Positions 4,696 through 49,881 of a stretch of 64,000 nucleotides of DNA are shown here, one piece after another. A program made the position numbers and the translations under genes. Numbering within the stretch: position 1 is the first letter of the stretch; the number at the start of each line of letters is the position of its first letter. This stretch comes from Salpingoeca rosetta (lineage: Eukaryota > Protista > Choanoflagellata): NCBI GenBank assembly GCA_033442325.1, contig JAWQFM010000003.1:222724-286723 (forward strand). The letters run 5' to 3'. The notes beneath the pieces were generated by a model. The model did no database searches. It had not been told where the DNA came from and saw nothing but the letters and a program-made list of their open reading frames with translations.

Positions 4696-5928
<1,233 letters not shown>

Positions 5929-19847: not shown

Positions 19848-19902
<55 letters not shown>

Positions 19903-22728: not shown

Positions 22729-22795
<67 letters not shown>

Positions 22796-22952
22796 CATAT
22801 ACACACACATATACACACACATATACACACACAAAAACACAGACACACAAACACACACACAGACACACAAACACAGACACACACACCCTCCTGTACTCAC
22901 GTTCTTGTTGCAGCTCGGCGTACACGAGCGCCTCCTCGTTTGCGTCCGCCAT
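20703..22952 (-). CDS. CENPO: Centromere protein O (CENP-O/Mcm21) homologue
   Basis: Coiled-coil N-terminus ([32 protein letters not shown]) then a CENP-O-like core AYRLGG...[21 protein letters not shown]...[13 protein letters not shown]...[18 protein letters not shown] (~21805-22086). Later exons [15 protein letters not shown] (~21295-21377) and [15 protein letters not shown] (20860-20703). One internal exon near 21430-21540 is not resolved. Confidence 0.8.
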
Positions 22953-23194
22953 CTTCGTGTAACGGCCTTTGCTGATATCGGCAGCGACTGAATTCAGATT
23001 TGGGCATGTAATTCGGCAGCAGTGGCAAACACCAACAAAACAACAACTTGCCCACCACCCCAGATCGACCTCATCCCACAGCTCGTCCCCCCTCCCCCTT
23101 CTCCTCACCACCACCCACCAACCACCACAACACACCCTTCGTACTCAAACCCGCACCCCCTCCCCTTTCAAGTCCCGTCTGCGCAGCGGTCACC
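22953..23194. promoter_or_regulatory. Probable bidirectional promoter between CENP-O and the RNF213-like gene
   Basis: Only 242 bp between divergent start codons. Confidence 0.5.
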
Positions 23195-25295
23195 ATGCTG
23201 CGGGTGGAGGTCGGCCAGATGGAGGCCGATCGCTCCGGCATGGGTGGTGGCATCGGAGCTGGTGGAAGAAGCAATGGCAGTGGCGGAAACGCGAATAGTG
23301 GGCGCCGGGGCCGGCAAGACATGACCATCCCAAGCATCGTCCAGCACAAGCGGGGCACAGTCCTGCTCACGCTGTTCGTGCCAAGGGCACTTGGCGAGCA
23401 GCGCACGGGTGACGACCTCGCCCAGAGCAGTGACGGTGGCTCATCGACATCAACAACACCAGCGATCAAGAAGATCAGCGTCAAAGAATGCACGCTCCTC
23501 GTACCAGACGCCGTCGCCAGCAACCACGGAAGCACAAGCTCTGATGTGGGGTCGCGCAAAGCTCCCACACCAACTTCCTCCCCCACCGAAGGCTCATCGG
23601 CAGCGTTTCGGGCACCGCTTGGCCGCATGGTCTCCGCGCCAGCACCGCCGCTCGCAACTGCGGGCCCCGCTGCCGCCAGTGGCTTTGACCGCCTCCATCG
23701 TATCGAATCCGATACCCACGCACCACCCGGCCCTCTGTCGCGCCAATTCAGCATGCAGCAACGCTTCAAACCCACAGGCGCAGCCGCTGCAGATGCAGCC
23801 CGGCAACCTGGGCAACCTGGGCAATATGGGCAACCTGGGCAGCATACGGTGCACGGTCTCGTCCCTGCGTTCCAGTTGGCCGACACTCCGCAGCTGGCAC
23901 ACCGCGAAGACCACCTGTACGTGTGCGAGTTGCAGACGCCCCGGCTCTCCCCAAAAGCCTGGCGCTGGATTGGATCGCCATCAGGGTCGCCAGCCAAGGA
24001 CAAGCAGCAACAGCAACAGCAGCAGCAGACGAAGAAGAAACAGAGCGGCGAGGCTTCGTCGCAAGACGGCGACAATGGTCTGCGCAAGCGATGCGCTGAC
24101 GCTGCGCGCTTTGAGCTGCAGATCAAGCTGTCCATCTCATTTGCGGCCAAGGGACACCAAGGCAGCACGCAGGCCGGCCTTGTGGAAGAGGTGAAGACGC
24201 TGTACTTGAGCATCGACCAGTCAAACGCAACAAACTGCGTCAAGTTTGCCATCGTGCACATGCCCACCGCCAAGCAGCCCCCAGCGAGCCCCATCACCCT
24301 GTGCGCCGAGTACATGGCATATGTGGCCGCATCCAGGCCCGGCCTTGACAGTGGCGCTGTCAAGCGTGGCCCCATGTTGGCACAGGCAGCGTGGCTCGTC
24401 TGGCACCAAGCGTTGCTCCTCTCCACGCTTCGAGGGTGTGTACATTGTTGCTCGTGTGTTGTGCTGAGTTGTGTGCTCTGCTGTTTGGTGCGTGGCTCTG
24501 TGCTTTTGTGTTGCGAAGCGCACGTGTTCTGTGCCGTGTACCTGAGCACCTGGGAGTGCAATTGTCACCATTCCTCTTTCCTCACTTCACGCATGCACGC
24601 GCGTACAGTTGGAAGTTCATGGACCGCTCCTATCAGTCCCTTCGTGTCACCTTTGACGCGCTGGACAAATATGGCATGGTCGGTACACAGCAATGCACTT
24701 GTGTGTGTGTGTTTGCTGGATGCCTGTGGACGCCCGCCATCTCCAACTTGCTCACACCCCTCATTACCCTCACACACACACACACGTACACTCGCGCGCG
24801 CACACATATGCACACACACACGCACGCACACACACATGAACACACACTCACACACACACACACTTATGCACACACACACTCACATGAACACACACTCATG
24901 TACACGCTCATTGCTGGCAGGATTCGCTGGAGGCGTTTGTAGCGCGGGCGTGCCTAACGGGCCAAATCCTGCGGTTTGCACAGCACCACCGCAGCCTGAT
25001 CCAGTTTTCGCCACGTGTTTGGGAGCTTGCGCCTCTCATCACCCGCCAAGCAGCCGCCGACGCCATTTCAACCTGGCTGAACCAGCGCAGGTCCCTCACC
25101 GCGTGGGAGCACGTACGTATGCGTATGATGATGTGTGGATTTGCAATGTGCATGTGTGTTGTGCATGCGTGTGCGTATGATGTGTGGATCTGCTTGTGCG
25201 CATTTGCGTTTGGTGAATTTGTGGTGTGTCGGGTATGCCATACCATTTTTGTTGCGTGAACTCATACAACATTACTTGACCTTTGGCTTTGCCTT

Positions 25296-25382
<87 letters not shown>

Positions 25383-28300
25383 TGCCGTGCATTGGCTCAT
25401 GTCAGGGCCTGGAGATGCTATTGTTTGTGTTCAAGCAAGCGCTGCGTGGGCTGATTTGCGTGGACATGACATCCATCCTGACCTCCTTCCGCTATCCGCG
25501 CGTGTTCCCCGTGCTTACGCGTGTCCGCGCCATGCCAGCTCGCCCTGCACTTGTTTGGGGCACACCTTACAAGGCTTTTGCCTTTGGGAACGGCCTGGCC
25601 CTTGCCTTGGCTGCGCTGAGGGAGGTGAAGCCTGCTGCCCTGCACATCCCCGGCACAAAGCAGCCGCCAGCAACACGCAAGTGGCAGACGCAAGTGCGGC
25701 AGCCGTTCCACCTCTCAGGTAGAATGCGTGTGAGCGCTGCTGATGAGTGTTGGTTGCCTGCGTGGTTGTGCATGTTTTCCGAGCGACATCAATGAGTGAC
25801 ATACATGTGTGCAGGTGTATGCTTGCGCGCGATAACTCCATATGTGTATGTGTATGGTGGTGGGCAACTCGCGTGCGACATTCGTGGGATTTTCCCTGTG
25901 CCGTTTCACACGCGCGTCTTTATTGTCTGTGGCTACCCTGCGCCCGCCCTCTCGACCACCACGGCCACATGACTCATGTCGGTGCACATCATTCGTCATC
26001 TCACCATTCGTCATCTCACCATCCCGATCTTCTCCTCCTGTCTTTCCCCTTTCCTGTTGCATGCCTCATCGCTCCTCCCCGCCTCCACGCGCGCTTTCTC
26101 CCTTGCTCCAAGTGTGCCACTGGCTGCTGACGGTGCTTGACCAGCACATGGGTGCACTTGAGGCTGCGCTCGCCGCCGCGTCCCGCAGCAAGCGTGTGCT
26201 GCACCATCGCCTTCGCAGCGCCATTGCCGACGGCGTGCTCCAGCCGAGTGATGAGCAGATGCTCACCGACGTGCACACGCGCGTGAATGCAGGCGAATGC
26301 CTTGTGCAGGACCTGGGCGCCACGCTAGCAGCATTGCGTAAGTGGGAGAAGACGGCCTTGGACGAGCGTGGGAAGAGCTTTAAGGACACCACACTGCGCA
26401 CGCTCATCTACACGTTCAACTTTGGGCTGGCGGATGAAGACAAAGCCATCATGAACGCCCTCATGGACTTGATGCCCGCATCGGCAAAGAAGGGAGGCAG
26501 TGCTGCAGGAAAAGGCACAGCTGGGCCAAGTTCATGGGCACGAGGTGGCGACGAAAATGATGATGATGACGACGATGACGACGATGGTGACGATGACGGT
26601 GAGGATGAACTGGAGGATAACGACGATGATGATGAAGTTGATGATGTTGATGATGATGATGATGATGATGACGACGATAGCGGCGGCGCAGGTCGGGGCA
26701 GACAAAAGCGAAAGGGAAAGAAGAAAGCAAAACAGAAGAACGCGCCACTGGAGCTTGGTCCCCGTGACTTCCGCGTCACCACCATCAGCGGCACAGGCAC
26801 CCGAGGTTGGTGTGTGCGTGGGTGAGTGGGTGGGTGAGTGAATGAGTGAGTGAGTACGTGTGTGTGTATTGGGACATGCCACGCGCACGCCTCTGCGGCT
26901 GTTTGGGCGTTTGCTCTGCTGTTGATCATGTGATGTTATCTTGAGCCACCGCTCCACACCCACCCTCCTTTCTTCCTCCCACTCAACTGCACGCATGCAC
27001 GCACGCCCGCTCACTCGTGTACATTGTGTACATTGTGCGCAAACAACATTGTGTGCTGACATCACAACACATCACATCACTAAAACGCAGGCAACCAGGA
27101 CACCCCCATCGAGGTTGTTGTTGACACACACAGAGGCAAAGGCAAAGGCAAAGGCAAAGGAAAGAAGGACACGGGTCCCGCATCGGCAAGCACGGGGTTG
27201 TCACCAGCAGCGTCGGCAACTGATGGTGGCACGCGCCGACCAGAGAGGGAACAGGACACTGCAAAGGAGAAGAAGAGGAAGAAGAAGCCCAAAGATGAGC
27301 GCCCTTCGTTCAACTCGCCCCAGGACGTGCTCTCTCTGCCAAACGGAGACATTGTTGTGTGCGACCGCGACAATGCGCGCGTGCGTGTCATCACACCAGA
27401 GGGGAAGGTGTCCACCGCGCTTGGGGTGGGCAAGCGTGGCCACCAGGATGGCGTCGGCGCAGGTGTCCGGCTGGCAGGACCACGCGGCATGACGCAACTT
27501 GCAAGCGGCTCATTTGTCGTCACTGATGCAGAGAACCACTGCATTCGCGAAGTCTCATCTGCGCTAGCCAAGGTGGAGACGATTGCAGGGTGCACACGTG
27601 CTGGCGTGCGTGATGGCGACGCGGCGGCTGCAGAGTTCCGTTACCCAACACATGCGCTCGAGATTCCACGGCAGAAGCTCATCCTTATCACAGACACGGG
27701 AAATCACACCATCCGCGCCATCAGCCCGCCCGACGCGGTGCGTGCGCTGTCGCATGTATCTCTAATCGTCATGCATGTTGCATGAACTCTCATGCGTGTG
27801 AAAGGTCATTGCGCTGTTGTTTAAGTTGTTGTCGTTTAAGTTGTTTAAGTTGTTGTTGTTGTTGTTTAAGTTGTTGTTGTGTTTAAGTTGTTGTTTAAGT
27901 TGTTGTTTAAGTTGTTGTTTAAGTTGTTGTTGTTGTTGAAGTTATGTCTCACTCACAACCCAGTGCTGTGAAAGGTGTGCACAATTCTCAAGTCATGTCA
28001 TACCATTTGATTTGATTTCACCGCACTCATCCATGCCATCGCCCATCCCGTCACACATGCGCATGCAAACGCCAACAGAAGGGCCATCGGACGGTGCGAA
28101 CGGTGGCTGGGCGCGCTGGACGGCCCGGCCACACAGATGGCCCTTCCGGAACCACCATGCTCGACACGCCCGCATACATGGCGCTGCTTCCAAATCGCAA
28201 CGTCGTCTTTACAGATGAAGGCAACCACTGCGTTCGCGTGCTGGACACCAAGTCGTGGCGTGTTGAGACCCTCTTTGGCACGCCCATGCGCCCTGGCAAG

Positions 28301-28839
28301 CGCGTCGGCGTGGGAGTTCACGCCCTGCTGCGCGCACCGTCAGGTAAGACAGAAGGGGGGCAATGTGGCGAACGTAGTCGAAGGCGTGAGTGCTTGCGTG
28401 CGTGCGTGCGTGTGTGTGTGTGTTAACTCATCACCAATCTCCGCCAATATGCGTGACTTGGCCTTCTTCCTGCTGTTCTTGTTCTGGTTCTTTGGTTCTG
28501 GTTCCTTTTTCTGGTTCTTTGTTCTGGTTCTGGTTCCCGTTGTTGTTTCTCTCCACAATGTTGCGTCATCATGCTACCACGCTCCTTGCTTCGAAATCGT
28601 TCCAACGCGTTCACGGCGTTCACTCACACCCTTGAACACCACAGGCATCGTTGTGAGCCCAGGAGGCGACATCTTTGTGAGCGACACGGGAAACGACCGC
28701 GTTGTCATGTATTCGCCAGTCACGCAAGAAGTCATTGTTGTTGCTGGCGGATTTGCAGGTAAAATTCACGCACAAGAAAACCTCCCGCACATGTCATTGT
28801 GCCCGCTCTTTGGGCACGTGTGCACGTTTCGTTGTATCG

Positions 28840-28904
<65 letters not shown>

Positions 28905-31332
28905 ACGCAAACAACCCTTACCCCCGCACGCGAATGCATGGAATTGTGCTCGAACACACTGAGTACTCACACGCTTTCACGATGATCACCAACAGAGCGG
29001 GAAGATATGGTGGATGGACACGGGCGCGCTGCAACACTGCAGGGCCCACGTGGCCTCACCTTTGACAACGGGGGTTGCTTGATTGTGGCGGAGGGCGCTG
29101 GTCACCGCGTCCGTCGCATCGCAACACCGGCTGCCACGGACCGCGCGCGCCTGCACCTGGACACACTCATGCGCCCCATCGCGCGCACGTACGCCAAGCT
29201 GAGCGACGCCGTGAAGCGAACGTACAACACCGCCAACAACACTGTGCGCGCACTCAACGCAGCGGCAACATGCATCAACGAAACGCGACAGAAGCTCCTG
29301 CCGAAAATGTATGCGCGCGAGGCGGCACACGCGATGGCCAACCTGCACATGTTCAAGCAGTCACCCGACCTGCTGCCACAGCTGGATGCCCTGATTGGCG
29401 CCGTGCCTGTGCTGCACAGCCTGCAAGACGTGATCACACCGCAGGTGTTAGAGGACCCCATGCTGCGCTCCCTGGCCAGCGACAAGCTGCTGGAGGTGCT
29501 TGGCGAGTACTCGTGGTCACCGCACGCATACACGCGTGACATGCAGCAGCTGATTCGCCTGGCAGAGGCCCACTTCCTCACCACCCTCCACGGGCAGACG
29601 GTGTTTGGTTCCAAGGCGTTCCGCTCCCGCCCGCGCATCGACGTCGACGGGCCGTCGCTCACCCTGCTCACCCTGCTGCTCCAGCAGAACAACGGCAAAG
29701 GGTTTTCTGACCCCACCTTCCGCGCCGCCGCGTTTGGATGGATCACTCGGGTGCAGGAGGAGCGGTCCGGTGCTGCCGCCGCATCGGCAAAGGCCAAGGA
29801 GATGAACGAGCAGCAGAAGCAGAGGCACCAGAAGCAGCAGCAGCAGGCGGCAACCACGGGCAAGGGGGCAGCAGCAGCAGCAACAGCAGCGGGGGCCACA
29901 CTGGGCGGCCCCACGGACAGCAGTGGCGTCGACAACATTGCGTCTCACTCACGCCGCTTGGTGCGGGCGCTGAAGTGGTGGTCGGCGTACAGCATGCCGC
30001 GCGACCCTCTCCAGGTGAAGACACTGCAGTGGCTCATGGCTGGTCACCTGCAGGGGCTGACAGCAGGACGCCTGCTGCTGCCGTCGCTGGCGACACTGCC
30101 AGTCATCTTCAAGGAGGTGCAGCTCGCACCAGGCCACGCCAGCGTGCTTGTCAATGCGCTGACTGCAGGAATCACGCAAGCCGATGTGGCAGAGGCGGTG
30201 TGGGACGAGATTGCGCCGTTCATCGCCAGCTGCGGCAGCAGTGCGGGCCTGTTGCGCAACGCGCTTGCACGCCACGTTATGCGACAGCTGATTATCGCTG
30301 TGATGCAGGCTGTGTTTGGCAGCAACGTTGCCCAGCGTGACACGCAGCGGCCGCTTCTCCGCGGGTACGCTTTCCGGGCGGCAGCGAGGCTGCTTGCATG
30401 GAATGCTGGGGACGCAAAGGTGCGTTTCATGGCCTCGGATCCAAAGGTGGTGGTGTCGGGCAAGCAGCAGCAAGGGCCCACCCGCGGTGGCGGCGATGGA
30501 GGCCAGCAAGAGGGCGAAGCCAGCACAGTACAGAAGCAGCAAAAGGGCACAAAGAAGGGCACGAAGAAGGACAAGGCGCAGCACGACGCCAGCGTACCTC
30601 AGAGCACTGCTGCTGAAGAAATGAAAGCGGTAAGCAGCGAGCTCCACGAGATTGTGCGTCGCATCACCGCAACCGTTGGTGCGCAGTACCGCTCGCTCGT
30701 CACCACCACGTGCAGCCTCTCGGCGCTCTCAGCCATGCACCAGCACAGTGCCACCTTCCGTGACATGTGCTACAGCATCAACATTCGCCACGGCATGCCA
30801 GCGCTGACCACGTGCGTTCGGTTGCGCGACTCTGCGCTCGCTGTTCTCAACAACGCCCGCGAAGTGGCCCTTGACCTGATGGTGGGTACCGAGGTGGCGT
30901 CTGCCGTGACACACGTCTCCGACTGCGTGGACACGTTGCAGCTCGCCGAACTGTGCCGCTTTGTGCAGCTGACGCTGGTACACCCAAAGGCGATGCAGGC
31001 GTTTGCGGGCGAGTGGGCGGTGGAGGCAAAACCGTACCTGACGCTGAACGACGGGCAGACGATTGCCGAACTTGACCCACCACTACCGTCGCTCCCGAAG
31101 CGACTGCTCACTGCTGCCGAGTGGCTGCAGAGCGTGCGCGGGGCCGAGCTGTTTCGGCACATCTGGCAGGACTGCACGCAGGATGTGGTTGGGATTTGGG
31201 AAGTCGCCGCCGCATGGCGTGGCTTCTGGACGCAGCTGCAAGACGGAACCCTCTCCCTGGACAAGTGAGTGCCGCTCCACGCAACGCTATCTTTGCGTTG
31301 TGAGGCGTGGGCATACTCTCACACACACACAA

Positions 31333-31363
<31 letters not shown>

Positions 31364-31400
31364 CACAAACATACACACACGCACACACACACACACACAT

Positions 31401-31476
<76 letters not shown>

Positions 31477-36077: not shown

Positions 36078-36167
<90 letters not shown>

Positions 36168-38686: not shown

Positions 38687-38718
<32 letters not shown>

Positions 38719-38758
38719 CACACACACACACACACACGCACGCACGCACACACACATG

Positions 38759-38832
<74 letters not shown>

Positions 38833-41800
38833 ATCTGTCTTTGTCACTGTGCACTCCAACAGGTCATTTCTGCAAATTTGCAAGGGCCGCAGAGCAGGAA
38901 CCCGTTCTGGCGGCGCTTCCCGGCCGTGACCATGTTCCAATTCCAGTGCTCGCCTCTCACCACGGCCAGCGGCATTCTGCAGCAGTTTGAGGTTGCCAAG
39001 CGCTATCAGGCGTCGTCCGAAGATGTCGCCGCCGTTCTGGTCCTCGATGAGGTTGGTCATTCGTGTGTATGGGTGCACATGTGTGCATGAATTGCGTGAA
39101 CGAGTGCGTGGATGTATGTGCATTTCGTGTATGTGCGCATGCGTAAGTGCATCACGACTTGTGAGCGTGTGTACATCCGTTACTTGTTGTAGGCATGTGT
39201 GAGCCGTCCTTGTGCTGAGCACGATGACACTGCCAACAGGCCCTGCATCGTTCACTATCAACCGTGGAACACCTCACGCTTCTGCTGTTGTGCTTTGAAT
39301 GGCAGATTGGTCTTGCGGAGTTTTCTCCCGACATGCCGCTGAAGGTTCTTCACGGTCTTCTTGTGGACCCGCCCATCCCCATCGTGGGCGTCTCAAACTG
39401 GGTACGCTCGCGATCCATGTTGCCTTGTATGTTTTGAATGCTTTGTTAAGGCGTCCTTGCTCACCTCATGATGATCGTGATGTTTCAACACACAACCAGG
39501 CGCTTGATGCAGCAAAGATGAACCGCGCAATCTGCCTGAGCCGTCCAAGCCCAAACTTCGAGACCCTTGTCACAACTGGTGCGTGTGTGTGTGCGTTTGT
39601 GCGTTTGTGCGTTTGTGCGTTTGTGCGTTTGTGCGTTTGTGCGTGTGCGTGTGCTTGCTTGTCGTCTGGTTTGCGTACACACTTGTGCGTTGCGTGCAAT
39701 CGCGTCAACCTCCAGTGTCTTCTGCCTCTCAAGACCACATGTTCTCCACCATCACCACCATCCCCCACCTGCGTGCCCCCTCCCTCCAAAATGTGCCCAC
39801 AGGCCGCCACATTCTGGGCGAATCAAAAGCAGCTGTGCAGCAGCTGTTGAACCGGATGCTGGAGCCGCTTGCCTCTGCGTTTCACACACTGATCCAAGAG
39901 GGCGAGAAGAAGCGGGCTTCCAAGGTGTTCTTTGGCATGCGAGACTACTACAGCCTGCTCAAGATGATGAAGCGACAGTTCACCACGGACCCAAAGCGCC
40001 TCCTCCGCGGCATGACCTCCCACGACCTCAACATGCTCGTCTGCCGCAACTTTGGCGGCGACACAGCCCTGCTCACGCGGGCCGTGCGTCTGTTCCACAT
40101 CCGCTGTCTTGGGCACGGCGCATCGGAACGCCCCGTGCACGTGCTTGATCTTGCGCGCGCGAACCTGTGCGATGCACACGCGCGCCACCTCCTGCTCTTC
40201 ACGTCCAACTCCATGGCACTGGAGATGCTGTTTGGGGCCGGTCTGATCCAAGGCACCAACACACGCGTGCTGATTGGCAGCCAGTTCACGGAAGACGCGT
40301 CTGAGCTGCAGCTGATCCACCAGATCAACGACGTGCGTCGCGCCATGGAGGCCGGCGACACCCTCATCCTCGTCAACCACTTCAACATCTTCGAGTCGCT
40401 GTACGACCTCCTCAACATGCGATACGTGACCAAGACGAACAAGCAAGGCAAGCGCGTCCGCATGCTTCGCCTGGCCATCGGCTCCCGCTCGCAGCTGTGC
40501 GAGGTTGCAGACGGGTTCAAGGTGATTGTCATTGTGGAGGACGCGGCGAAGCGCAAGCTGGACTTGCCCTTCCTCAACCGCTTTGAGCGCCAGCTCATGC
40601 GCCCGCACGACGTCGTGACGAAATACCAGCAGCCGCTGGTAGAGGAGTTGCTGGAGTGGGTGCGGGCCATTGTCAGGGAGACGGGGCTCGGCAAGGTGTC
40701 GCGCGTGTTCCCTTGCCTGACCAACGACAGCCTGCCGTCTGCAGTCCTACTGGCGCTCAAGTTCAAGCCCGTGCCTTCCGATGAGGACATGGAGTGTGCA
40801 GGCGACCTGGTCAAGGACTGGCTGTACCGCATCGCCACGCCATCGGCCGTCTTGCACTCGCCAACGCTGCAAGAGGCGTTTGGTGGCCTGGACGGCTTTC
40901 TCCAGACCCATGGCGACCTTGCTGCCGTCATGCGCGCATATGTGCTGCGGCCAAAGAAGACGCACACATTGTCGTCTCTGCAAACAGCAGCGCCCGCAGA
41001 AAAGGAGGCGCAGCCACAGAAGAAGAAACAGCAGCAGCAGCACGCAGACGCCAACGCAGCGCAGAGTCAGGGCGAAACAGCTGCCGCCACCCAGGGCGAA
41101 GAAACACCTTCAGATGGTACCGATGCGACAAGCGACGTTGCCACTGCTGATGTGGGCGGTGATGGTGCGACAATGACGACGGCAGCAAGGCAGCCAGATG
41201 TGGCAAAGGCGGACGAAGGTGCTCAACAACAAGGTACTGGTGCCGAAACAACGCAGGTTGGAGCAAAGCAAGAAGAGGCAGCAGAAGATGTGGCAGAAGA
41301 AGAAACAGTGTCCAAGGGCACCGCGACAGCGCCCGAGGAGCAGTCGGCTGTGGGTGACACCGCTAGCACCACAGGCACAGCCACGAGTACACCCGCAACT
41401 GCGACCACCACGACCGTGACCGAGGAAGCAAAGGTTGAAGACGAACGTACGTGCAGGGACAATGAGGCGCAACACCGGCGCAAGCGTCGCACGTACCGTG
41501 ACGTGGACAGCGATCTGACGGTGCTGCTGACCCAGTCTGCAGCGGCACACATGACGCCATCGACCTTTGACGGGCTTGTTGGACCAGCGTGGGATGTGCA
41601 CTATGAGAACTTTGCTGCCTTCTCCTCGGAGCGGCAGCTGGAGGCGCGCCTGACCGGCTTCTTCACCGATGCCGCTGCGCTCGTTCGTGCGGCCACAGCC
41701 CAAGACGACAACGAGGACAACGGCAGCAACAAAGGCGACGAGAGTGCTGGTGAGGGCACGGAAGCACGCAGTCATCAGCGTGCGCATCGCGAGGGCGCGG

Positions 41801-44800
41801 GCGCGGTGGTACGTGAGCAAGGCCTGACGGCGCTAGCTTCAGACACCAAGACGCATGCTTTGCTGGTGCTGCAGTGCGACTCGCTTGCTGCCAAGGCCGA
41901 GGTGATTCGCCACGCCATGTGGCTGTGTCGCGCGGGACGTGACAGGATGCTGCGAGACAGCGGGCTCTCGCCTCGGCAGGCATCGCACATCAAGGTGCTG
42001 GTTGTGCTGCATCTTCCCCCGAGCGTGAAGGGCCGCAAGCGCTACTTCCCACTCACGTTCATGCGGGACTGGCAGTGCCTCTTCTGCGACGACCTGCGGC
42101 CACAGCAGCAGGGCGCCTTCCGCGTGCAAGTGCAGCGCACCGTGTACGAGCTTGTGCGTGACGGCCACATCTCCGTTGAGCGTGCACTCAAGACGCAGTT
42201 TATGGCCGCGCTCTCCCGCTGCCGTGTCCCCGTCGAGACAGCAGGCGGCACAGCTGCTGACCATAGTGGTGGTGTTGGCGGTGGCCGTGGCCGTGGTGCT
42301 GCAGAAGATGGTGATGGCGATGGCGACGGCAGCGGTGGCGTTGGACGTGAGCTGTCCACACCTGCGTCCACAAACCACTATGCCCGCGTGGTCATGTTCT
42401 CACGTTTGCTGAAGAACGCGCGCTTCCTCGCCCTATTCGCCAAAGTGGTGGAGGAGGTGGCACGTGTGGCACTCGCCGACGGCAAGCACTCCACCGTTCA
42501 TGTGCAATGGGCATCGAAAACCCCGCACGGGTCCCTGCGTGAGTCACTGCACACGTGCTTGGAGGCGGTGATTGTGGACATCATGGCATACGTGTTGCCT
42601 GCGCTTGACCACCACTTCACATTGAGTGTTCTGGATGCTGCGCTGGAGCGTGGTGACCGCGCAAGCGTGGACCTGTGCTTCAAGCTGTGGGGCTCGCCCA
42701 CTGTGCTTGATGTTGAGGCGCTTGGCATGACATACCGCCCACAGCAGCACCGCGTCATCACCATGCCCCACGCAGGGCAGCACGCCATTGCGCCAAACGC
42801 GTTCCCAATGTCATATCGGATCATGAAGCATCTGGTGGCTGAGCAGACGCGCGCCCTCGTGCTGACCAAGGCAGGCACAGACGTGATGCGCGCCGCAAGC
42901 GTGCTGCAGCAGGCATGCCACACCGTGTTTGGGCCGAGCCTTGTGCGCGCTTGGGCGTCGCAGCGCGACGCACAGAGACAGCAGCTGCGGTATCTGTATG
43001 ATCTGGTCAACTATCACGTTGCACCCTCGCGGGGCCTCACCTGGCAGCAGCACGCGCGGTGCCTGGCGCTGATTGGACGCGCATGCGACCCCGTGTTGCT
43101 CGCCAGCGTGGCCGGGCTGCACGCCGTGCTGATGCAAAACGAGCTTCGCCTGTCCACCTATCTTTCGCTCCTGGCCAACGAGCACCTGTCGGGCGTCATC
43201 CATGTCGACAGCGTCCTGGAGCACTTGGAGGATTGTGTGGATTCGCTGCTCAGTTCACCGTCGCCGCAGCAAAGCGGAAGCACTGCTTATGGTGCCGCTG
43301 GTGACGGCGCCACATTTCTGGCCCCCGAGGACGACGACGACCTCTTGCTTGACGACGCTGACGATGACGCTGACGATGACGATGACGATGATGTTGAAGG
43401 TGGTGAGTATGATACGAACAATCGTGGTGACGACGGTCATGCAGTGGGAGCATCGCCAGCAACGACTGCAGGAACAACAGCGATGGCAGCAACAGCTGGC
43501 ACCTCCATGTCCGCTGCGCGTGCACGACTGCAGACGGTGGACACGGAGCTGACGAAGCAAGTGCTGCGAGCAGTTCGGGAGAAGCTTGAGTCGGCGGTTG
43601 GGGAGGATTCGCTGGTGCAATTGGTGGAGGCCGTGCAGACGATCCACACTGTCTCGCCGCAGGTGAACCGGCTCTTGTGCGCACACGGTAGCGAGGCCAG
43701 CGACGAACACAAAGAGGACAGTAGCAGCGAAGAAGAAGAAGATGATGGTGGTGGTGATGATCCGCAACGCAATGCAACGTGCGCACAACTGCGTGAGATG
43801 GCGGGTCTCTCTGCGTTGGCGGATCTTCTGCAAGTGCTGCAGCAAACAGCATGCCAGCCGCTGCGCAGAGTCACCAGCTTGCGATACCGCGCCAGAGGCC
43901 ACCTCGGGCCCTTGGAGTTGGAGGAAGCGGGCGTGACCCCTCACGTGCTGGGCGCGCACGTGCTGCTGGAGAATGCCGCAAGCCTGCGTGTTGTGGACAC
44001 GGCGCACATCACGTCTGCGCTGCGCACGGTGGCGCAGGTGTGCGCTGTATTCAGGGAAGGCGCGCTGTTTGCGGCAGAGGACGCGTGGCTGAGCGGCATG
44101 ACCGCTGTGGACGAGGCTGAGAGCGTGCACCTGCTTGCTGCGCGGCGCATGGACTATCTTCAGGCCTCGCTCGTCTCGGCCTATTTGCAGCACTGCATGG
44201 CGTGCGTGGAGCTGAGCCCGCGCCACCTGATGCGTGCGCGTGCGTCGGTGTGCGAGCGGCTGTGGACACTGCTGAGCGAGTTTGAGCTTGAGGGCGCGAA
44301 TCACGGTAACCGCACGTCTGCAGCCGAGGCCAAGAGCTTGGTGCTGCGCGGTGCGCTGATTGCATTCGAGACGGTGTCTGGCACGACGGCGATGGACATG
44401 TGCGAGCAACGGCGCGGGCGCGTGTCTGCACAGGCGCTGCTCGTCACGTTGTGGGACGTGATGGATCGCAATGCACAGGGCCATGCTGACGGCGGCAGTG
44501 GCAGCGACAAGTCTGCACGCGTGCTCACAGCCCGTGCGGTGAAGGCTGTGGCGTTGCCCAAGGCCGCGCTCTCCGTGGAGAAGCGGGACGACGGTGTGAC
44601 CGTGTTCCTGCGCGGTCTGGTGGCGTGCCACCGTGCGCTTTCGAGCTTCACGCGGTCTCTGCAACGACGTAGCGCCACGCGCCCGCCCGCACAGTCGCCG
44701 CAAGGCCCGCTGGCGCAGCTGTTGGCGGAGCACTGGGCTGGGCTGCACGTGCTCAAGCGGGTGCGGCGAACGATGGGCATCGAGGGGATTGCGATGCTGA

Positions 44801-45940
44801 CGGCGTGGACGGAGCAGCAGCGGCCTTGGGTGAAGCTCGATCGCACGCTGCAGGTTGCGGCGAGTGACAGGCTGCCGGACGTGTTTAAGCACTTCACGCA
44901 CGCGCAGAACCAGCCGCTGATGAATGTGGCCGTGCACTTTGCGGTGACGTGCGATGACTACTCGGAACTCAAGCACCAGTTTTCGCCCTCGCTCCTGTCA
45001 TCCGAGCTGATGAACGCTTTTTCGTGCTTTCTTGGTGCCTACTTTTCCCAAGTTATCGAGCCAAACCTCCATCGTAAGCACGTGCTATGTGGGGCAATGC
45101 GTGGTGTTTGGGTTGTCATTGTTGCTGTTTTGGTCTCAGGTGCTACATTTCGCGCTTGTTCGTGTGCCCACATGCTTTGTTGTTCTTGCTCATGAATTAC
45201 TTTTCGATGTTCATACAAACACACTCACACAACACAAACACAAATGCACACACACACGCACACACACACGCACACACACACGCACACACACACATCAAGG
45301 CACGCGTGGCGTGAAAGAACTGCACAAGTGGTTGCGTGCGAACGTGTTGTCCCGGCTCTCTGGTCCAGCTTACCAGCTGCTGCAGTGGATTCTCGATGGC
45401 TGCCGCTTTGGGGTGAATGCGCATACACATGTTTACTCACGTGTTGTTACATATACACACGTTTACTCACGTGTTGTTACATATACACACATGTACATAC
45501 AGACACATGCACGCACGCGCATGTACATAAACGTGCGCGCGCGCACGGCCTGTGTTGTGATGCAGCGTGTCAGTGAAAGGCGCCTGCTCACTGTCGTCGC
45601 GTGCTTTCGTACAATCGCTTCAACGTACGACTTACATGGCTTGTTGTTGTCTCCTGCTTGGCCCGTGCCAGTTTTCCCACACGGCGGAAGACGAAGAGGA
45701 TCACGAACAGGAAGATGTGGTGCTGCAGCAGCTGGCGTTTGTGCTGGGCATCATCGCCATGCGTCAACCCCGGTCCTGGCTCGGTGAACTTGTGGTGTCG
45801 CCTGCCTCGTCCTCCAAAGCCTACATCGTCACCATCCCAGGCAACGAACTCGCTCTCATCTTCAACTCCTCACCCTATGTCGGCTGGTACCGCTGCCCCA
45901 ACGTACGTGCGTGCGTGCATGCGTGTGCGTGCGTGCGTGC

Positions 45941-45999
<59 letters not shown>

Positions 46000-46604
46000 T
46001 GTGTTTTTGTGTGTACGTGTGTGCGTGCGTGCGTGCGTGCATGCGTGTGCGTGCATGCGTGTGCGTGCATGCGTGTGCGTGCGCATGTGTGTGGGGGGGA
46101 GGGGCTCCACTTGATGTGCGTGCGTACGTGGACTTCTCTCCGTCTCTCCGTCTCTCCGTCTCTCCGTCTGTCTGTCTTTCTCTCCCACTGCTTGTGTTTT
46201 GCATGTCAGTCACCACACACGCACTGTGTCCTTCCTTGCTGACTTGTCCTTTGTATTGATGGGGGTGTCGTTTCTGCGTTTCCATGCTGCGCAGGGCCAC
46301 CTGTACTCTGTTGGCGAGTGCACGATGCCGATGCAGCAGTCCAGGTGCCCCGACTGCAAAAAGTCGATTGGCGGACTCAACCACAACATGCTCTCAACAA
46401 ACACCAGAATCTCCGATTCAGAGGTGCGGCCAGACAAATTGTTCAAAGGGTGGAGGGGGGGGGATTGGAGTAAGCGGTACCACTGTGCCATTTGTTGTTG
46501 TCTCGCCTAATCACTGACACTCGTCTGACATAATCGTACACAAACACTCACGTTCGCACACATGTTCACGCACACACACGCACACACACACACACGCACG
46601 CACG

Positions 46605-46680
<76 letters not shown>

Positions 46681-49358
46681 GGGCAGTACTCGAATGTGGG
46701 GCGGCCGCTCACCACGACGTTTGTGGCGGCGCTGCGGCTCATTCTGCACCTCAGCGTTCGCCTGAGCCTGTTTGCGTTTGGGCCTACCTCCGCCATGCAA
46801 TTCCTGCGTGGCCCCAAGCGCAGCATTTCCAAGACGCAGGCACGCTTTGTGCAAGATCTGACACACGTGTGCTTGCGCGACCTTGACGCCATTGCCCGGC
46901 GACGCTCGCTACGGGAGGCGTACATGCTCGTTGTGCTCCTCCTCAAACACATGCACAACAGCGCCATCCCGCCTGCGTTCTCCACGGCTGACAAGCGCGA
47001 CGCGTACGAGCGGACGCTGCAGAACGCAACAGCAAACAAGTATCTGACCGACCCGGCGTACCTGCGCAGGGCGGCAGAGAGCGCCGTGGAGGACACACGC
47101 GGGCAGCAGCTTGCCAGGCTGTGGAACTGGTGCAAGCAGCAGATTGAAGTTGCGGACGGCACAAACGCGGGCGAGTCAGCAGCAGGATCGTCAGCACAAG
47201 ACAAATCGTCGGCTCGAGCAGACTTGGCGTCGGTGCCAGGTAGCAGGGACCCTCGCAGCCGGCGTCGTCGTGGCGGTGCCACTGACTACGACGATGACGA
47301 TGATGACGATGGTGATGATGACGATGACAGTGGCGAAAGCATGTACTTTGAATCACTGCTGTCTCAGCGCATGGACGATGAGAGTGGCGCGTCGCTGCTG
47401 ACGATGCTGCGGTCTCCACGCGAGCCCGTCACGCTCGACCGCTTCTTTGAGGACTTTCAGTCCAGCAGCGAGTACAAGACGCGCCATCGCCTGCTTGATG
47501 CTGTGCAGCGCATGGAGGAGCGGTTGGTGCATGTGCATGTGCTGGTGGACATTCTCGCCTGGCACGCTGTCCTATTTGACGTGTTCCCGGACGGCAGCCT
47601 GACACGTGAGCAAGCAGCGGAGATCACCAACGCGGATGTGGTTGCAATGCTGCCGGTGGGACGACGCGAGGCCGCATCGCGTGTCCTCGATCGCTTCTGT
47701 ACCGGATTCAACGCCGCCTTTCCTCTCCTGCACCCGGTACGCATGCAGATGGCGCGTGGTGTGGTGTTGTAATGTGCGGTGGTATGCAGCGTTGGGATTG
47801 GTGTGCATGTAGGGGCGACTGACATGACTGGTGTTTGGTTTGGGGCGTACTTGACTGTTGCGTGGAGCGGCTAACTGGTTTCTGCAGTGTCGAGTTTGTT
47901 TTACACCACCAAGCAGCACTGCTTGGTTCATGCCAGTTGTGATGTTACACAGATTTATTATTTCATGTTGCGTGCACTCACTTGTGATGCTCTGTGCATT
48001 TTCAATCGTTCTTTGTTGCCTGCCGTTCCTCACCTCCCACTCCATCCATCCCCCACCTTGCTCAATGGGTACGCTCGTCACGTTTGACACAGAACATCTA
48101 CGAGTGCGACCCGAACCCCTTCTTGACACAGCGCAAGGAGGTAGATCTGTCTGGACTACAGCAGTCCCCAGGCCTCCCCATGAGCCCGAGCGTCGCCATC
48201 ATCTTCTCGCTGCCGGCACACGCACGTGGCGAGACGGATGCGCGAGGCCTGTGCACGCTGCAGCTGTGCCGGCTGCTGGCCAACGCACACAACGAACTGG
48301 TGACTGCACTCGCTGCCGCAAGGGCGCCTGTGAACACAGCAGCTGCAATGACCGTCGACCATGCACAGCAGCAGCAACAAGGGCAGCAGCGGCAACAGCA
48401 GCAGCCACAACAGCAGCATGTGGTACGAGCAGACGCGCAGGCTGTTGCGAGCGCGTTTGGCGCTGCTGTATCGCATCTTACGCCGCGGGTTGCGCTGGAC
48501 CAAGCCATCATCAAGTACTCGCGTGGCGAGATGGAGCGGCTTGTGCGCCTGCATGCGATTGAGCCGTTGCGATACGCGGTGACGGGAATCACGTCGTGGT
48601 TTGACTTTGCCGGCGTGGAGAATGCGTTGGCGCGCCGTCTGCTGCACGGCAAGTCGACAATTCAGCTTGAGCTGCAGCAGTACCACTACGGCGGGGAGCT
48701 GAACAACACGGGGCACCTGAGCACCCTGCGCATGCGTGTGCCACAGGCTGCTCTGAGCAAGGCGGTGAGCGCGCACATTGTGAGCGAGCTGGACACGCAG
48801 AACCGCATCAACGCCGTGCTGGGCCACCTTGAGGCGTGCATCTCGTTCCTGGCCTCCGTGGGCGGCCTCTCTGCTGCTGCCGGCATCTCCGAGGAGACGC
48901 TACTTGCAGATTACATCACGGGCACGCTGCTGGTGAATGCGGACACGTGGGCCAGCGCCTCGTGCGACTCCATCAACAGGCACGTGCAGCTGCGACACGT
49001 ACAGAGCCTGTTTGTGCTGTTGGAGCAGCAGCTGTCTGCGACCACGCTCGACTTTGTGCACTCGTCGTACCGCGAGCCGCTGCCGGCAGATGTGGTTGCG
49101 GTGCTGAAGCGGGACATGCACGCGTTTGACTTTGACTTTTTGCAGACGCTGCTGCGTGATCTGCTGGTGAACCGGCTGACGGAGGCAAACTTCCCGAGCG
49201 ACGGCCCGCTCAAGGACTATCTGGAGTACCTGACGGAGGTTGACATTTCCGAGGCGGCGTGGTTCCAGTTCCTGCCAGACACGCTCGCGCTCGCACACGC
49301 ACACAGCCTGTACGAGTTTGTCTCCTCCTCCTCCTCGTCATCTTCTCAGGAGGTGTGA
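23195..49358 (+). CDS. RNF213/mysterin-like giant AAA+ ATPase and RZ-finger E3 ligase with N-terminal NHL repeats, ~20 exons, ~7000 aa
   Basis: The exon junctions checked splice in frame from ATG 23195 to TGA 49358. RNF213-type motifs: [128 protein letters not shown] finger [35 protein letters not shown] and an RNF213-like C-terminal domain. Confidence 0.9.
26770..29120 (+). other. Six NHL repeats (predicted beta-propeller) within the RNF213-like gene
   Basis: Repeat cores [103 protein letters not shown], joined by V.TxAG...G..DG linkers. Confidence 0.9.
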
Positions 49359-49881
49359 TTTGAGAGAGGAGAGTGATGTGTGTGTGTGTGTGAGAGAGGG
49401 CGAGAGAGGAGAGTGATGAGTGTGTGAGAGAGGGTGTGTGTGTGTGAGTGTGTGAGTGTGTGTATGAGTGTGAGGGTGTGAGTGGGAGTGAGACGTGAGA
49501 GAATGGGACGTGATTGTATGCACGTTTGTGTGTGTGTGTGTGGTTGTTGCTTTTGTTGTTGGTTTCAAGTGAACACTTTAAGTGAAACATCATCGAAGAG
49601 CATGCCAAGCAACACATGGACACAGGTAGACACAGTCACAAACAGGCAGGGACACAAACACACACAGGCAGGCAGACACAAACGTGCATACAATCACACA
49701 CACACACACACAGACACGGATGAACACACACGCACACACACAGACACGGATGAACACACAAACACACACAATCCAAACAAATGTGGTGGTGATTGGTGGA
49801 TATCTTCAGCCAATTTTCGCCAACCACAGCAAAAAGCCATTCCCACCGCAGCTTTTGCGCGACAACAAACAGAACAACACC

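What the first reader, a model, noticed from the sequence alone, without database searches (positions are those of the whole stretch)
23195..49358. ~7000-aa RNF213/mysterin-like AAA+ E3 machine in a probable choanoflagellate: candidate pre-metazoan antibacterial ubiquitylation system
Seen: ORF-track fragments of 710, 753, 1591, 839, 1870, 358 and 454 aa join through phase-compatible GT-AG introns into one ~20.9-kb CDS, including exons of ~4.5 and ~5.3 kb. It has intact Walker A/B pairs (GECGCGKT with FLDE; GKPGSSKT with VLDE), an Arg-finger segment AKMNR, an RZ finger and an RNF213-type C-terminal domain. Established: mammalian RNF213 is a ~5200-aa dynein-like AAA+ E3 that ubiquitylates LPS on cytosolic bacteria to trigger xenophagy. 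Inference: a complete, apparently catalytically intact homologue in a bacterivorous unicellular relative of animals could be an ancestral cell-autonomous immunity module. Automated annotation may split it or call it hypothetical.
Basis: partly seen in the sequence, partly recalled or inferred. Interest (0 to 1): 0.85.

Follow-up and report, generated by a model that had tools for sequence, protein, structure and literature searches.

The report
RING-less RNF213-like giant ligase gene
This stretch holds one very large gene (about 6,900 amino acids) of a single-celled relative of animals that is a true relative of the human immune ubiquitin ligase RNF213, but the family occurs all over the eukaryotes, this copy lacks the RING domain and carries an extra propeller domain, and its antibacterial role is untested.

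Summary
The seven + strand ORF pieces and every quoted motif are at the stated places. They join through GT-AG introns into an 18-exon model of 20,721 nt (6,906 aa), from ATG 23195 to the stop at 49356-49358.

Homology to solved RNF213 is collinear along the protein:
- linker/AAA1-2: profile E 1.7e-41
- AAA3-AAA5: E 2e-50 and 2e-29
- E3 module: profile E 1.5e-25
- RZ finger: Pfam PF20173 E 4e-22, with all six key Cys/His residues
- C-terminal domain: profile E 8.6e-34, and RNF213 is the only significant Foldseek match

Four qualifications apply.
- There is no RING; the mouse RING falls in an insertion absent here.
- An NHL propeller and about 870 orphan residues sit at the N-terminus. Exons 1-4 are predicted only.
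- The family is pan-eukaryotic, not pre-metazoan. One-to-one orthology to vertebrate RNF213 is unresolved.
- The genome holds four more RNF213-like loci, one with RING plus RZ. The scan had already noted such genes on other pieces.

The antibacterial role is speculation.

The parts
23195..24397 (+). Predicted exon 1 (aa 1-401), starting at the first ATG after a CT-rich leader. The sequence is an orphan, partly low-complexity (polyQ).
   Evidence: The ORF is open and the codon score is positive only in this frame (0.115; the other five frames are negative). GC123 is 0.65/0.55/0.70, like the confident exons. No homologue was found. The donor GTCTGG is weak. There is no transcript evidence.
24921..26805 (+). 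Predicted exons 2-4 (24921-25112, 25406-25718, 26113-26805; aa 402-801). Helical-looking sequence ends in a long Asp/Glu run and a Lys-rich tract.
   Evidence: The exons come from a dynamic-programming gene model. Codon score is coding-like only in the predicted frame. No homologue was found. The NHL exon has no in-frame Met before blade 2, so it needs an upstream exon.
27091..29123 (+). NHL beta-propeller (aa ~873-1185) spread over exons 5-8: 27091-27737, 28079-28343, 28645-28758 and the start of 28996-31264.
   Evidence: Pfam NHL PF01436 scores E 2.2e-16 in 27084-27782 and 0.0027 in 28011-28982. The splice sites are strong (GTGCGT..CAACAG, GTAAGA..CCACAG, GTAAAA..CAACAG). The region is homologous to N-terminal NHL regions of full-length relatives P0161, P0174, P0178, P0182, P0184, P0185 and P0030.
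28996..31264 (+). Exon 8 (aa 1143-1899): last NHL blade plus a helical N-arm with no named domain.
   Evidence: The ORF is open with codon score 0.225. The donor GTGAGT at 31265 overlaps the in-frame TGA at 31266. There is no Pfam or PDB sequence hit.
31526..36007 (+). Exon 9 (4,482 nt; aa 1899-3393): stalk, linker and AAA1-AAA2. The AAA2 Walker A AGAGKT lies at 34731-34748.
   Evidence: A profile of this exon plus 27 homologues hits mouse RNF213 1467-2064 at E 1.7e-41. G-x-G-K is invariant in the family.
36312..38535 (+). Exon 10 (aa 3393-4134): AAA2/AAA3 and the start of AAA4. AAA3 Walker A GECGCGKT is at 37507-37530, Walker B FLDE at 37687-37698, and AAA4 Walker A GKPGSSKT at 38500-38523.
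   Evidence: PDB phmmer hits RNF213 at E 2.2e-50, against midasin at 3.9e-7 on 47 aa only. Pfam finds AAA_5/AAA.
38863..39578 (+). Exons 11-13 (38863-39051, 39306-39401, 39500-39578): rest of AAA4. Walker B VLDE|IGLAE spans the intron 39052-39305. AKMNR (candidate Arg finger) is at 39512-39526.
   Evidence: The spliced peptide [49 protein letters not shown] matches the homologues' [19 protein letters not shown]...[14 protein letters not shown] almost residue for residue.
39803..45081 (+). Exon 14 (5,279 nt; aa 4256-6015): AAA4 lid, AAA5-AAA6, hinge, and E3-back/E3-shell with large acidic inserts. No RING.
   Evidence: PDB phmmer hits RNF213 2881-3156 at E 2.4e-29. A profile of 43183-45081 plus 32 homologues hits mouse RNF213 3655-4434 at E 1.5e-25, and the mouse RING falls in an insertion absent from the profile. 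An HMM of 66 homologues hits model aa 5137-6135 at 285 bits. There is no RING regex match. The 3' junction (45081/45672) is ambiguous.
45672..46423 (+). Exons 15-16 (45672-45902, 46295-46423) with the RZ finger at 45885-46384, split by intron 45903-46294. Zn ligands are C6090, H6094, C6110 and C6113. The nucleophile is C6101 (46319-46321) and the general base is H6122 (46382-46384).
   Evidence: The spliced peptide scores Pfam PF20173 E 4.1e-22, 78 bits against a cut-off of 27. It aligns to the human RNF213 RZ at E 3.7e-13, [36 protein letters not shown] against WYTCPNGHPCSVGECGRPMEQSICIDCHAPIGGIDH. The spacing is identical to the published Zn and catalytic residues (bioRxiv 10.1101/2025.10.14.682297). 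Homologue HSPs abut exactly at 45902 and 46295.
46687..47736 (+). Exon 17 (aa 6136-6485): E3 region between the RZ finger and the C-terminal domain.
   Evidence: The region is collinear with homologues, with tblastn depth up to 25 at 47332-47739. The junction peptides SDSE|[21 protein letters not shown] and AFPLLHP|[11 protein letters not shown] match homologues.
48093..49358 (+). Exon 18 (aa 6486-6906 plus stop): RNF213-type C-terminal domain.
   Evidence: Profile A1 hits RNF213 (8s24 4917-5236) at E 8.6e-34. The AF2 model has pLDDT 80. In Foldseek against the PDB the eight matches with E <= 0.001 are all RNF213 entries (E 1.5e-8 to 1.5e-6), and the next hit has E 0.65. Homologues end at the same stop.

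Best explanation
Window 23195-49358 (+) holds one 18-exon gene for a protein of about 6,900 aa (about 760 kDa). The protein belongs to the RNF213 (mysterin) family of giant AAA+ ubiquitin ligases, in a RING-less architecture with an N-terminal NHL propeller that recurs in protists.

Layout from N to C:
- about 870 orphan residues
- an NHL beta-propeller
- a helical arm and linker
- a six-module dynein-like AAA ring: AAA2 keeps a Walker A; AAA3 and AAA4 keep Walker A, Walker B and the AKMNR arginine segment
- an E3-back/shell/core scaffold without the RING insertion
- an RZ finger
- an RNF213-type C-terminal domain

The most likely mechanism is inferred from mammalian RNF213. Nucleotide binding in AAA3/AAA4 gates the E3 module. 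An E2~ubiquitin thioester passes ubiquitin to RZ-finger Cys6101. His6122 acts as general base, and ubiquitin is passed to a lysine or hydroxyl group of a target. The NHL propeller and N-arm probably recruit that target.

Shown here: gene structure from the NHL exons to the stop, family membership, and conservation of the motifs. Inferred: attachment of exons 1-4, catalytic activity, and the substrate. The biological role, immune or otherwise, is unknown.
For: - One gene: proteins of Salpingoeca urceolata, Sulcionema, Cymbomonas and others are collinear with window 27.3-49.3 kb and end at the same stop. All junctions are GT-AG and in phase, and their junction peptides match homologues.
- RNF213 family, collinear over five segments: linker/AAA1-2 E 1.7e-41; AAA3-4 E 2.2e-50; AAA4-5 E 2.4e-29, and 396 bits against a vertebrate RNF213 fragment; E3 module E 1.5e-25; RZ E 3.7e-13 with Pfam PF20173 E 4e-22; C-terminal domain E 8.6e-34, with RNF213 entries the only significant Foldseek matches.
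- Catalytic and nucleotide motifs are intact.
- NHL plus AAA plus RZ recurs in Rigifila, Entosiphon, Prymnesium and other full-length proteins.
- The mechanism rests on Ahel 2020 (PMC7311170: the RING is dispensable and is an insert in E3-back) and on the RZ catalytic residues in bioRxiv 10.1101/2025.10.14.682297.
Against: - No transcript evidence. The only hint is that eight contig runs guessed to be RNA hold 0.66-0.75 of the words of 44000-49900, close to the model's exon share of 0.64-0.73.
- Exons 1-4 have no homologue, and the exon-1 donor GTCTGG is weak.
- The 45081/45672 junction is ambiguous.
- In AAA-core trees the gene sits in a protist subfamily (100 SH-aLRT), not next to vertebrate RNF213. 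The order of the three clade-A groups is unresolved and the tree is unrooted.
- The N-arm shows no similarity to the RNF213 N-arm.
- The predicted C-terminal domain superposes only loosely on RNF213 (TM 0.36-0.43, rmsd about 8 A).
- No activity has been measured.
Confidence: 0.78

Rival explanations
1. Two genes rather than one. An upstream orphan gene (about 23195-26825) ends at the stop just after exon 4. A separate NHL-RNF213-like gene of about 6,100 aa starts in or near exon 4.
For: Exons 1-4 have no homologue in any relative or database searched. The reading frame of exon 4 runs on to a stop at 26823-26825. The exon-1 donor is weak. No reads could be laid.
Against: The NHL exon has no in-frame Met before its second blade, so it needs an upstream coding exon. 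Exons 1-4 lie on the same strand, are coding-like only in the frames that join in phase, and no terminator or promoter gap is evident. Relatives of 6,800-7,200 aa exist (P0184, P0185, P0198).
Confidence: 0.13
2. The protein is an ancestral cell-autonomous antibacterial effector that ubiquitylates LPS or another bacterial surface lipid in a bacterivore. The function would be homologous to that of mammalian RNF213.
For: The RZ finger keeps the Cys/His pair that RNF213 uses for ester-linked ubiquitylation. The organism is reported by an earlier scan note to be the bacterivorous choanoflagellate Salpingoeca rosetta. The genome carries a diversified set of five RNF213-like loci, a pattern often seen in defence genes.
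Against: Nothing here bears on the substrate. The family is pan-eukaryotic, including photosynthetic algae and a moss. The gene belongs to a protist subfamily whose relation to vertebrate RNF213 is unresolved. Mammalian RNF213 also acts on lipid droplets and other targets (PMC6400562, title and abstract listed). NHL propellers in other proteins bind RNA or proteins (my own knowledge).
Confidence: 0.1
3. The protein is a non-catalytic or decaying copy: a scaffold or pseudogene whose ligase function is carried by the RING-plus-RZ paralogue elsewhere in the genome.
For: The RING is lost. Large acidic low-complexity inserts sit in the E3 module. The branch in the tree is long (0.91-1.28). A paralogue on contig C24 keeps both RING and RZ.
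Against: About 20.7 kb of CDS is open with no internal stop. All Walker, RZ Zn-ligand and catalytic residues are intact. Codon bias is maintained in every exon. The RING is dispensable for RNF213 activity (PMC7311170), and 64 of 66 related proteins lack a RING-like Cys/His pattern.
Confidence: 0.05

Closest known systems
Vertebrate RNF213 / mysterin (PDB 6TAX, 7OIK, 8S24, 9JW1)
   Same: The order of modules is the same and is detectably homologous: linker/AAA1-2, active AAA3 and AAA4 with Walker A/B, E3-back/shell/core, an RZ finger with identical spacing of Zn ligands and catalytic Cys/His, and a C-terminal domain.
   Different: There is no RING; the mouse RING aligns to an insertion absent here. 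The protein is about 1,700 aa longer, with an NHL propeller and an orphan N-terminus. The N-arm is not detectably similar. The E3 module carries acidic inserts. The gene sits in a different subfamily in the AAA-core tree, with orthology unresolved.
Unnamed protist NHL-AAA-RZ giants: Rigifila ramosa P0161 (5,677 aa), Entosiphon sulcatum P0174, Prymnesium parvum AB1Y20_005488 P0185 (6,914 aa), Sulcionema specki P0030, Salpingoeca urceolata P0016
   Same: They share the subfamily (100 SH-aLRT). Most share the same architecture: N-terminal NHL, RNF213-like AAA core, RZ finger, C-terminal domain and no RING. They are 35-48% identical in the core.
   Different: These are database entries without names or any study. 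The first ~870 aa of the window protein are not shared with them. The S. urceolata protein has no NHL hit on record.
Four RNF213-like paralogous loci in the same genome (G000 C22:~1144369, C24:~632327, C29:~877625, C29:~413928)
   Same: They are giant ORFs (5,811, 5,462 and 3,972 aa open frames) with an RNF213-like AAA core, 30-36% identical to the window gene. Three have an RZ finger about 5 kb downstream.
   Different: They form a separate clade with coral and amphioxus proteins (100 support). The C24 copy has a C3HC4 RING about 450 aa upstream of its RZ, as in vertebrate RNF213. Earlier scan notes (unchecked) describe one that ends in a PARP-type ADP-ribosyltransferase.
ZNFX1
   Same: It shares the RZ finger (PF20173) with the same Zn-ligand and Cys/His spacing: C1849, H1853, C1860, C1869, C1872, H1881.
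   Different: ZNFX1 is an SF1 RNA helicase with NFX1 zinc fingers and a Miz domain. The window protein has a six-AAA ring instead, and no helicase domain was found.
Midasin and dynein heavy chain
   Same: Both are single-chain multi-AAA rings of the AAA_5 type. The window protein has Pfam AAA_5 and AAA_7 hits.
   Different: Only a 47-aa P-loop stretch matches midasin (E 3.9e-7, against 2.2e-50 for RNF213). One weak match to a dynein chain (E 3.7e-7) lies on intron-derived repeat translation at the start of ORF 31269.

Membership tests
RNF213 (mysterin) family | AAA core specifically similar to RNF213 rather than to midasin, dynein or generic AAA+ | tested here: met
   RNF213 scores E 2.2e-50 and 2.4e-29, against midasin at 3.9e-7 on 47 aa. 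A vertebrate RNF213 fragment scores 396 bits over model aa 3764-4547.
RNF213 (mysterin) family | Two catalytically competent modules (AAA3, AAA4) with Walker A, Walker B and the arginine segment, plus an AAA2 Walker A | tested here: met
   [29 protein letters not shown] and AGAGKT are present. ATPase activity itself was not tested.
RNF213 (mysterin) family | Linker and AAA1-2 region homologous to RNF213 | tested here: met
   Profile A2 hits mouse RNF213 1467-2064 at E 1.7e-41.
RNF213 (mysterin) family | E3 scaffold (E3-back, shell, core) homologous to RNF213 | tested here: met
   Profile A3 hits mouse RNF213 3655-4434 at E 1.5e-25. The window sequence alone gives no pairwise hit, but it matches the family HMM at 285 bits.
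RNF213 (mysterin) family | RING domain (zinc-binding Cys/His motif; Ahel 2020 describes it as C4HC3) inserted in E3-back | tested here: not met
   There is no Pfam RING hit and no RING-like Cys/His pattern in the 6,906-aa model. The mouse RING aligns to an insertion absent from the profile. The RING is dispensable for RNF213 E3 activity (PMC7311170).
RNF213 (mysterin) family | RZ finger with four Zn ligands plus the catalytic Cys and His | tested here: met
   Pfam PF20173 scores E 4.1e-22. The alignment to the human RNF213 RZ conserves all six residues.
RNF213 (mysterin) family | RNF213-type C-terminal domain | tested here: met
   Profile E is 8.6e-34. RNF213 entries are the only significant Foldseek matches (E <= 0.001), although TM is only 0.36-0.43.
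RNF213 (mysterin) family | N-terminal stalk (N-arm) homologous to RNF213 | tested here: inconclusive
   No significant similarity was seen upstream of the linker. An NHL propeller is present there instead. No fold comparison of the N-arm was made.
RNF213 (mysterin) family | Orthology to vertebrate RNF213 in a phylogeny | tested here: inconclusive
   The gene is on the same side of the 100%-supported split as vertebrate RNF213. However, it sits in a protist subfamily, the three clade-A groups form a polytomy, and there is no outgroup.
RNF213 (mysterin) family | E2-dependent transthiolation and ubiquitylation of LPS or other substrates | not testable with these tools
   This needs biochemistry.
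ZNFX1 family | SF1 helicase core with NFX1-type zinc fingers upstream of the RZ finger | tested here: not met
   Pfam finds AAA_5/AAA and no helicase or NFX1 fingers. Only the RZ finger is shared.
TRIM-NHL proteins | RING, B-box and coiled coil followed by a C-terminal NHL propeller | tested here: not met
   The NHL propeller is N-terminal, and no RING or B-box was found.

The most novel reading that the evidence does not exclude
RNF213-like giants with an RZ finger date back to the last eukaryotic common ancestor as nucleotide-gated ligases. In bacterivorous protists the NHL-bearing subfamily would be a pattern-recognition effector. Its propeller would bind a microbial surface or nucleic-acid ligand, and its RZ finger would ester-link ubiquitin to a non-protein substrate. 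The five diversified copies in this choanoflagellate would then be an innate-immune gene family predating animals.
Probability: 0.1. Interest if true: 0.85.

Novelty: new variant of a known kind. Interest (0 to 1): 0.55.

Why it matters
The one RNF213 structure paper I opened (Ahel 2020, PMC7311170) describes RNF213 as conserved in all vertebrates. In the held paper library I found no paper treating RNF213 relatives in protists. The only paper mentioning choanoflagellates traces the RZ domain of ZNFX1, not RNF213, to them.

This window shows a near-full-length relative in a choanoflagellate. The database searches show the family in most eukaryotic supergroups, often fused to an NHL propeller and mostly without a RING.

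This moves the origin of the RZ/AAA ligase far below animals. It fits the biochemical finding that the RING is dispensable.

It also offers a bacterivorous organism in which the ancestral role of the ligase could be tested, if the genome is indeed Salpingoeca rosetta, which from my own knowledge is genetically tractable. The gene itself is an ordinary family member, and the immune reading remains a hypothesis.

Tried and rejected
- **Read laying.** No RNA reads could be laid, so there is no junction evidence. They lie in predicted intron 1, a CA-repeat stretch. Local scripts that read the whole window (ORF, splice and local tblastn work with the window as subject) still included them.
- **Pfam on unspliced ORFs.** These missed the RZ finger because an intron splits it.
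- **Single-sequence PDB searches.** Searches with the C-terminal ORFs and with ORF 29007-31265 found nothing. Family profiles were needed.
- **The window's own annotated protein.** It did not appear in either protein collection. I could not check how public annotation models the gene.
- **Exon 1 search.** It found no relative.
- **First gene models.** They ran on upstream through weak 69- and 16-nt exons to an ATG at 19379. I rejected that extension as a probable separate gene joined by the algorithm. With a homology bonus the models also over-extended exons into introns, so I curated the junctions by hand against homologue alignments.
- **Pairwise BLAST of model aa 5383-6015.** It gave nothing. 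The region is divergent and carries acidic inserts.
- **Dynein match of ORF 31269-36041.** It lies on translated intronic CA repeat and is spurious.
- **Frame error.** One genome search failed for a frame error and was corrected.
- **Not attempted.** I did not fold the spliced RZ region.

Full report
**Observation.** All quoted motifs are at the expected places: GECGCGKT at 37507, FLDE at 37687, GKPGSSKT at 38500, VLDE at 39040 and AKMNR at 39512. The window has 53-63% G+C and five 100-N gaps, none inside the gene.

**Gene model: method.** No eukaryotic gene finder is on hand, so I built a model in three steps.
- I trained a codon-usage score on the long ORFs and ran a dynamic-programming search over GT-AG introns.
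- I laid 65 long relatives on the window with local tblastn.
- I curated every junction by hand against the relatives' sequences.

**Gene model: result.** The model has 18 exons and a 20,721-nt CDS (6,906 aa, about 760 kDa). It runs from ATG 23195 to the stop at 49356-49358 with no internal stop. The two largest exons are 4,482 and 5,279 nt, and the 17 introns are 98-590 nt.
- Two apparent in-frame stops (28983, 31266) lie in introns. The second overlaps a consensus GTGAGT donor.
- Many introns hold CA/GT microsatellites. These explain the 'THTHTH' tails of the raw ORFs.

**Is it one gene?** Full-length proteins from other eukaryotes are collinear with the window from 31 kb to 49,322 and end at the same stop. 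They include Salpingoeca urceolata (4,953 aa), Sulcionema specki (5,207 aa), Cymbomonas tetramitiformis (5,532 aa) and several unnamed ones. The Sulcionema protein is collinear from 27.3 kb.
- The small AAA4 exons splice to VLDE|[16 protein letters not shown]...SNW|[13 protein letters not shown]. This matches the relatives almost residue for residue.
- Relatives' HSPs abut exactly at 45902 and 46295, across the RZ intron.
- The NHL region (model aa 873-1202) is homologous to N-terminal NHL regions of nine full-length relatives.
- Exons 5-18 are therefore one gene with high confidence.

**Exons 1-4 (23195-26805) are predicted only.**
- For them: their codon score and GC123 are coding-like in the predicted frame alone, and they join in phase. 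The NHL exon has no Met before its second blade, so it needs upstream coding sequence.
- Against them: they have no relative, and the exon-1 donor is weak.

**No transcript evidence.** They lie in predicted intron 1. The one hint of expression is weak. Eight contig runs guessed to be RNA hold 0.66-0.75 of the sampled words of 44000-49900. The model's exon share there is 0.64, or 0.73 with a 3' UTR.

**What it is.** Homology to solved RNF213 structures is collinear along most of the protein.

| Segment | Evidence |
|---|---|
| Linker/AAA1-2 | profile of exon 9 plus 27 relatives, E 1.7e-41, mouse 1467-2064 |
| AAA3 to start of AAA4 | single sequence, E 2.2e-50 |
| AAA4-AAA5 | E 2.4e-29; 396 bits against a vertebrate RNF213 fragment |
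| E3-back/shell/core | profile, E 1.5e-25, mouse 3655-4434 |
| RZ finger | E 3.7e-13 |
| C-terminal domain | profile, E 8.6e-34 |

- Midasin matches only a 47-aa P-loop stretch at E 3.9e-7.
- An AlphaFold model of the last exon (pLDDT 80) finds RNF213 entries as its only significant matches in the PDB. Eight hits score E 1.5e-8 to 1.5e-6, and the next hit scores E 0.65. The superposition is loose (TM 0.36-0.43).

**RZ finger.** It is split by intron 45903-46294. This is why Pfam missed it on the raw ORFs.
- The spliced peptide scores PF20173 at 78 bits (cut-off 27, E 4e-22).
- It reads [36 protein letters not shown], against human WYTCPNGHPCSVGECGRPMEQSICIDCHAPIGGIDH.
- The six positions are model C6090, H6094, C6101, C6110, C6113 and H6122. 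They have exactly the spacing of the published Zn ligands and of the catalytic Cys and general-base His: ZNFX1 C1849/H1853/C1860/C1869/C1872/H1881 and RNF213 C4516/H4537 (bioRxiv 10.1101/2025.10.14.682297).

**Differences from RNF213.**
- There is no RING. Pfam finds none and no RING-like Cys/His pattern occurs in the model.
- In the profile alignment the mouse RING sequence (cfichg...cpycl) falls in an insertion with no counterpart in this subfamily. This fits the structural description of the RING as an insert in E3-back that is dispensable for activity (PMC7311170).
- The N-terminus is different and longer. It has about 870 orphan residues with polyQ, a long acidic run and a Lys-rich tract. 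An NHL propeller follows (Pfam E 2e-16), and then an arm with no detectable similarity to the RNF213 N-arm.
- The E3 module carries long acidic inserts.

**Distribution.** A full HMMER scan of 1.84 billion representatives found 1,297 relatives of the AAA4-6 and hinge region. Named ones come from most eukaryotic supergroups:
- choanoflagellates: S. urceolata
- CRuMs: Rigifila
- Apusozoa: Thecamonas
- Amoebozoa: Arcella
- Discoba: Naegleria (named 'RZ-type domain-containing protein'), Entosiphon, Sulcionema, Lacrimia
- stramenopiles: Pinguiococcus, Incisomonas
- Rhizaria: Amorphochlora, Gymnochlora, a cercozoan
- alveolates: Amoebophrya
- haptophytes: Prymnesium, 6,914 aa with NHL
- green algae and a moss: Cymbomonas, Sphagnum
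- animals: corals, amphioxus, vertebrates

The family is therefore pan-eukaryotic, not a pre-metazoan step. At least eight relatives combine NHL, AAA and RZ, so the window's architecture is a recurrent but unnamed type. In the held paper library I found no paper on RNF213 relatives in protists. One ZNFX1 preprint traces the RZ domain of ZNFX1 to choanoflagellates.

**Phylogeny.** I built AAA3-AAA5 trees with FastTree on 138 rows and with IQ-TREE on 33 rows. Both give a 100%-supported split.
- Clade B holds coral and amphioxus proteins and four paralogues from this same genome.
- Clade A holds vertebrate RNF213, a group with Arcella, Naegleria and chlorarachniophytes, and a 100%-supported group with the window gene. 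That last group also holds S. urceolata, Pinguiococcus, Rigifila, Entosiphon and diplonemids.
- The order of the three clade-A groups is unresolved. The tree is unrooted, and sampling was biased towards relatives of the query.
- Strict orthology to vertebrate RNF213 is therefore not shown.

**Paralogues in the same genome.** The genome (55.4 Mb, 68 contigs; the window is C3:222724-286723) has RNF213-like AAA cores at four further loci. These are C22:~1144369 (5,811-aa open frame), C24:~632327 (5,462 aa), C29:~877625 (3,972 aa) and C29:~413928.
- RZ fingers lie about 5 kb downstream at three of them.
- The two C29 copies are 97% identical in the core.
- The C24 copy has a C3HC4 RING about 450 aa upstream of its RZ, as in vertebrate RNF213.
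- Earlier scan notes on other pieces of this genome (unchecked AI notes) describe an RNF213-like giant ending in a PARP-type ADP-ribosyltransferase and one with RING plus RZ. My loci are consistent with these, but I did not match coordinates.
- The window gene is thus one of a diversified set, not the organism's single RNF213.

**Organism.** An earlier follow-up note names the genome as Salpingoeca rosetta. I did not verify this independently.

**Mechanism.**
- Shown: the motifs for nucleotide binding and hydrolysis in AAA3 and AAA4, an AAA2 Walker A, the E3 scaffold, the RZ finger with all catalytic residues, and the C-terminal domain.
- Inferred from mammalian RNF213: ATP binding in the AAA core activates the E3 (PMC12075652, abstract). 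An E2~Ub thioester transfers ubiquitin to the RZ cysteine, here C6101. With H6122 as base, ubiquitin then goes to a lysine or hydroxyl group.
- Inferred from position only: the NHL propeller and N-arm select the target.
- Not addressed by any evidence here: the substrate and the biological role.

**Verdict.** The evolutionary framing needs correction: the family is pan-eukaryotic, this copy lacks a RING, it is one of five paralogues, and orthology is unresolved. The antibacterial function is a hypothesis. The gene is a new architectural variant of a known kind, with moderate interest.

Noticed in passing
G000 C22:~1134538-1151970, C24:~625256-641641 (minus strand), C29:~869600-884000, C29:~404800-421700 (loci L010-L023): There are four further RNF213-like giant loci in the same genome, with open frames of 5,811, 5,462 and 3,972 aa. 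They form a clade with coral and amphioxus proteins. The two C29 copies are 97% identical in the AAA core, which points to a recent duplication. The C24 copy has RING plus RZ.
   Followed up: partly
window 24398-24920, 25113-25405, 28759-28995, 31265-31525, 36008-36311, 38536-38862, 45082-45671, 45903-46294, 46424-46686: Most introns of the gene hold CA/GT dinucleotide microsatellites of 42-130 nt, which translate as THTHTH or CVCVCV.
   Followed up: partly
window 22145-23000: The region upstream of the ATG is packed with CA and GACA-type microsatellites, followed by a CT-rich leader (23012-23194). It looks intergenic or promoter-like. No promoter analysis was done.
   Followed up: no
window 19379-20455 (+): Three short exons with high codon scores (84, 138 and 141 nt, 0.31-0.49 per codon) and good splice sites lie upstream, across an N gap (19748-19847). 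They are probably a separate gene that the gene-model algorithm wrongly joined to this one.
   Followed up: no
window ~57095 (+): A P-loop [18 protein letters not shown] lies here. From memory it resembles GPN-loop GTPases, but I ran no search on it.
   Followed up: no
window 26560-26680 (model aa ~719-760) and 23990-24020: There are very long Asp/Glu runs (two runs of 9-10 Asp within an acidic tract of about 45 residues) followed by a Lys-rich tract, and a polyQ stretch in exon 1. Further acidic inserts interrupt the E3 module (model aa ~5430-5500).
   Followed up: no
related proteins P0188, P0194, P0197, P0199, P0200, P0203, P0211; P0198; P0193: Relatives carry other add-on domains according to precomputed Pfam hits: U-box (PF04564), UBA (PF00627), PH (PF00169), RanBP zinc finger (PF00641) and WWE (PF02825). 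The family seems to swap accessory modules around a constant AAA/RZ core.
   Followed up: no
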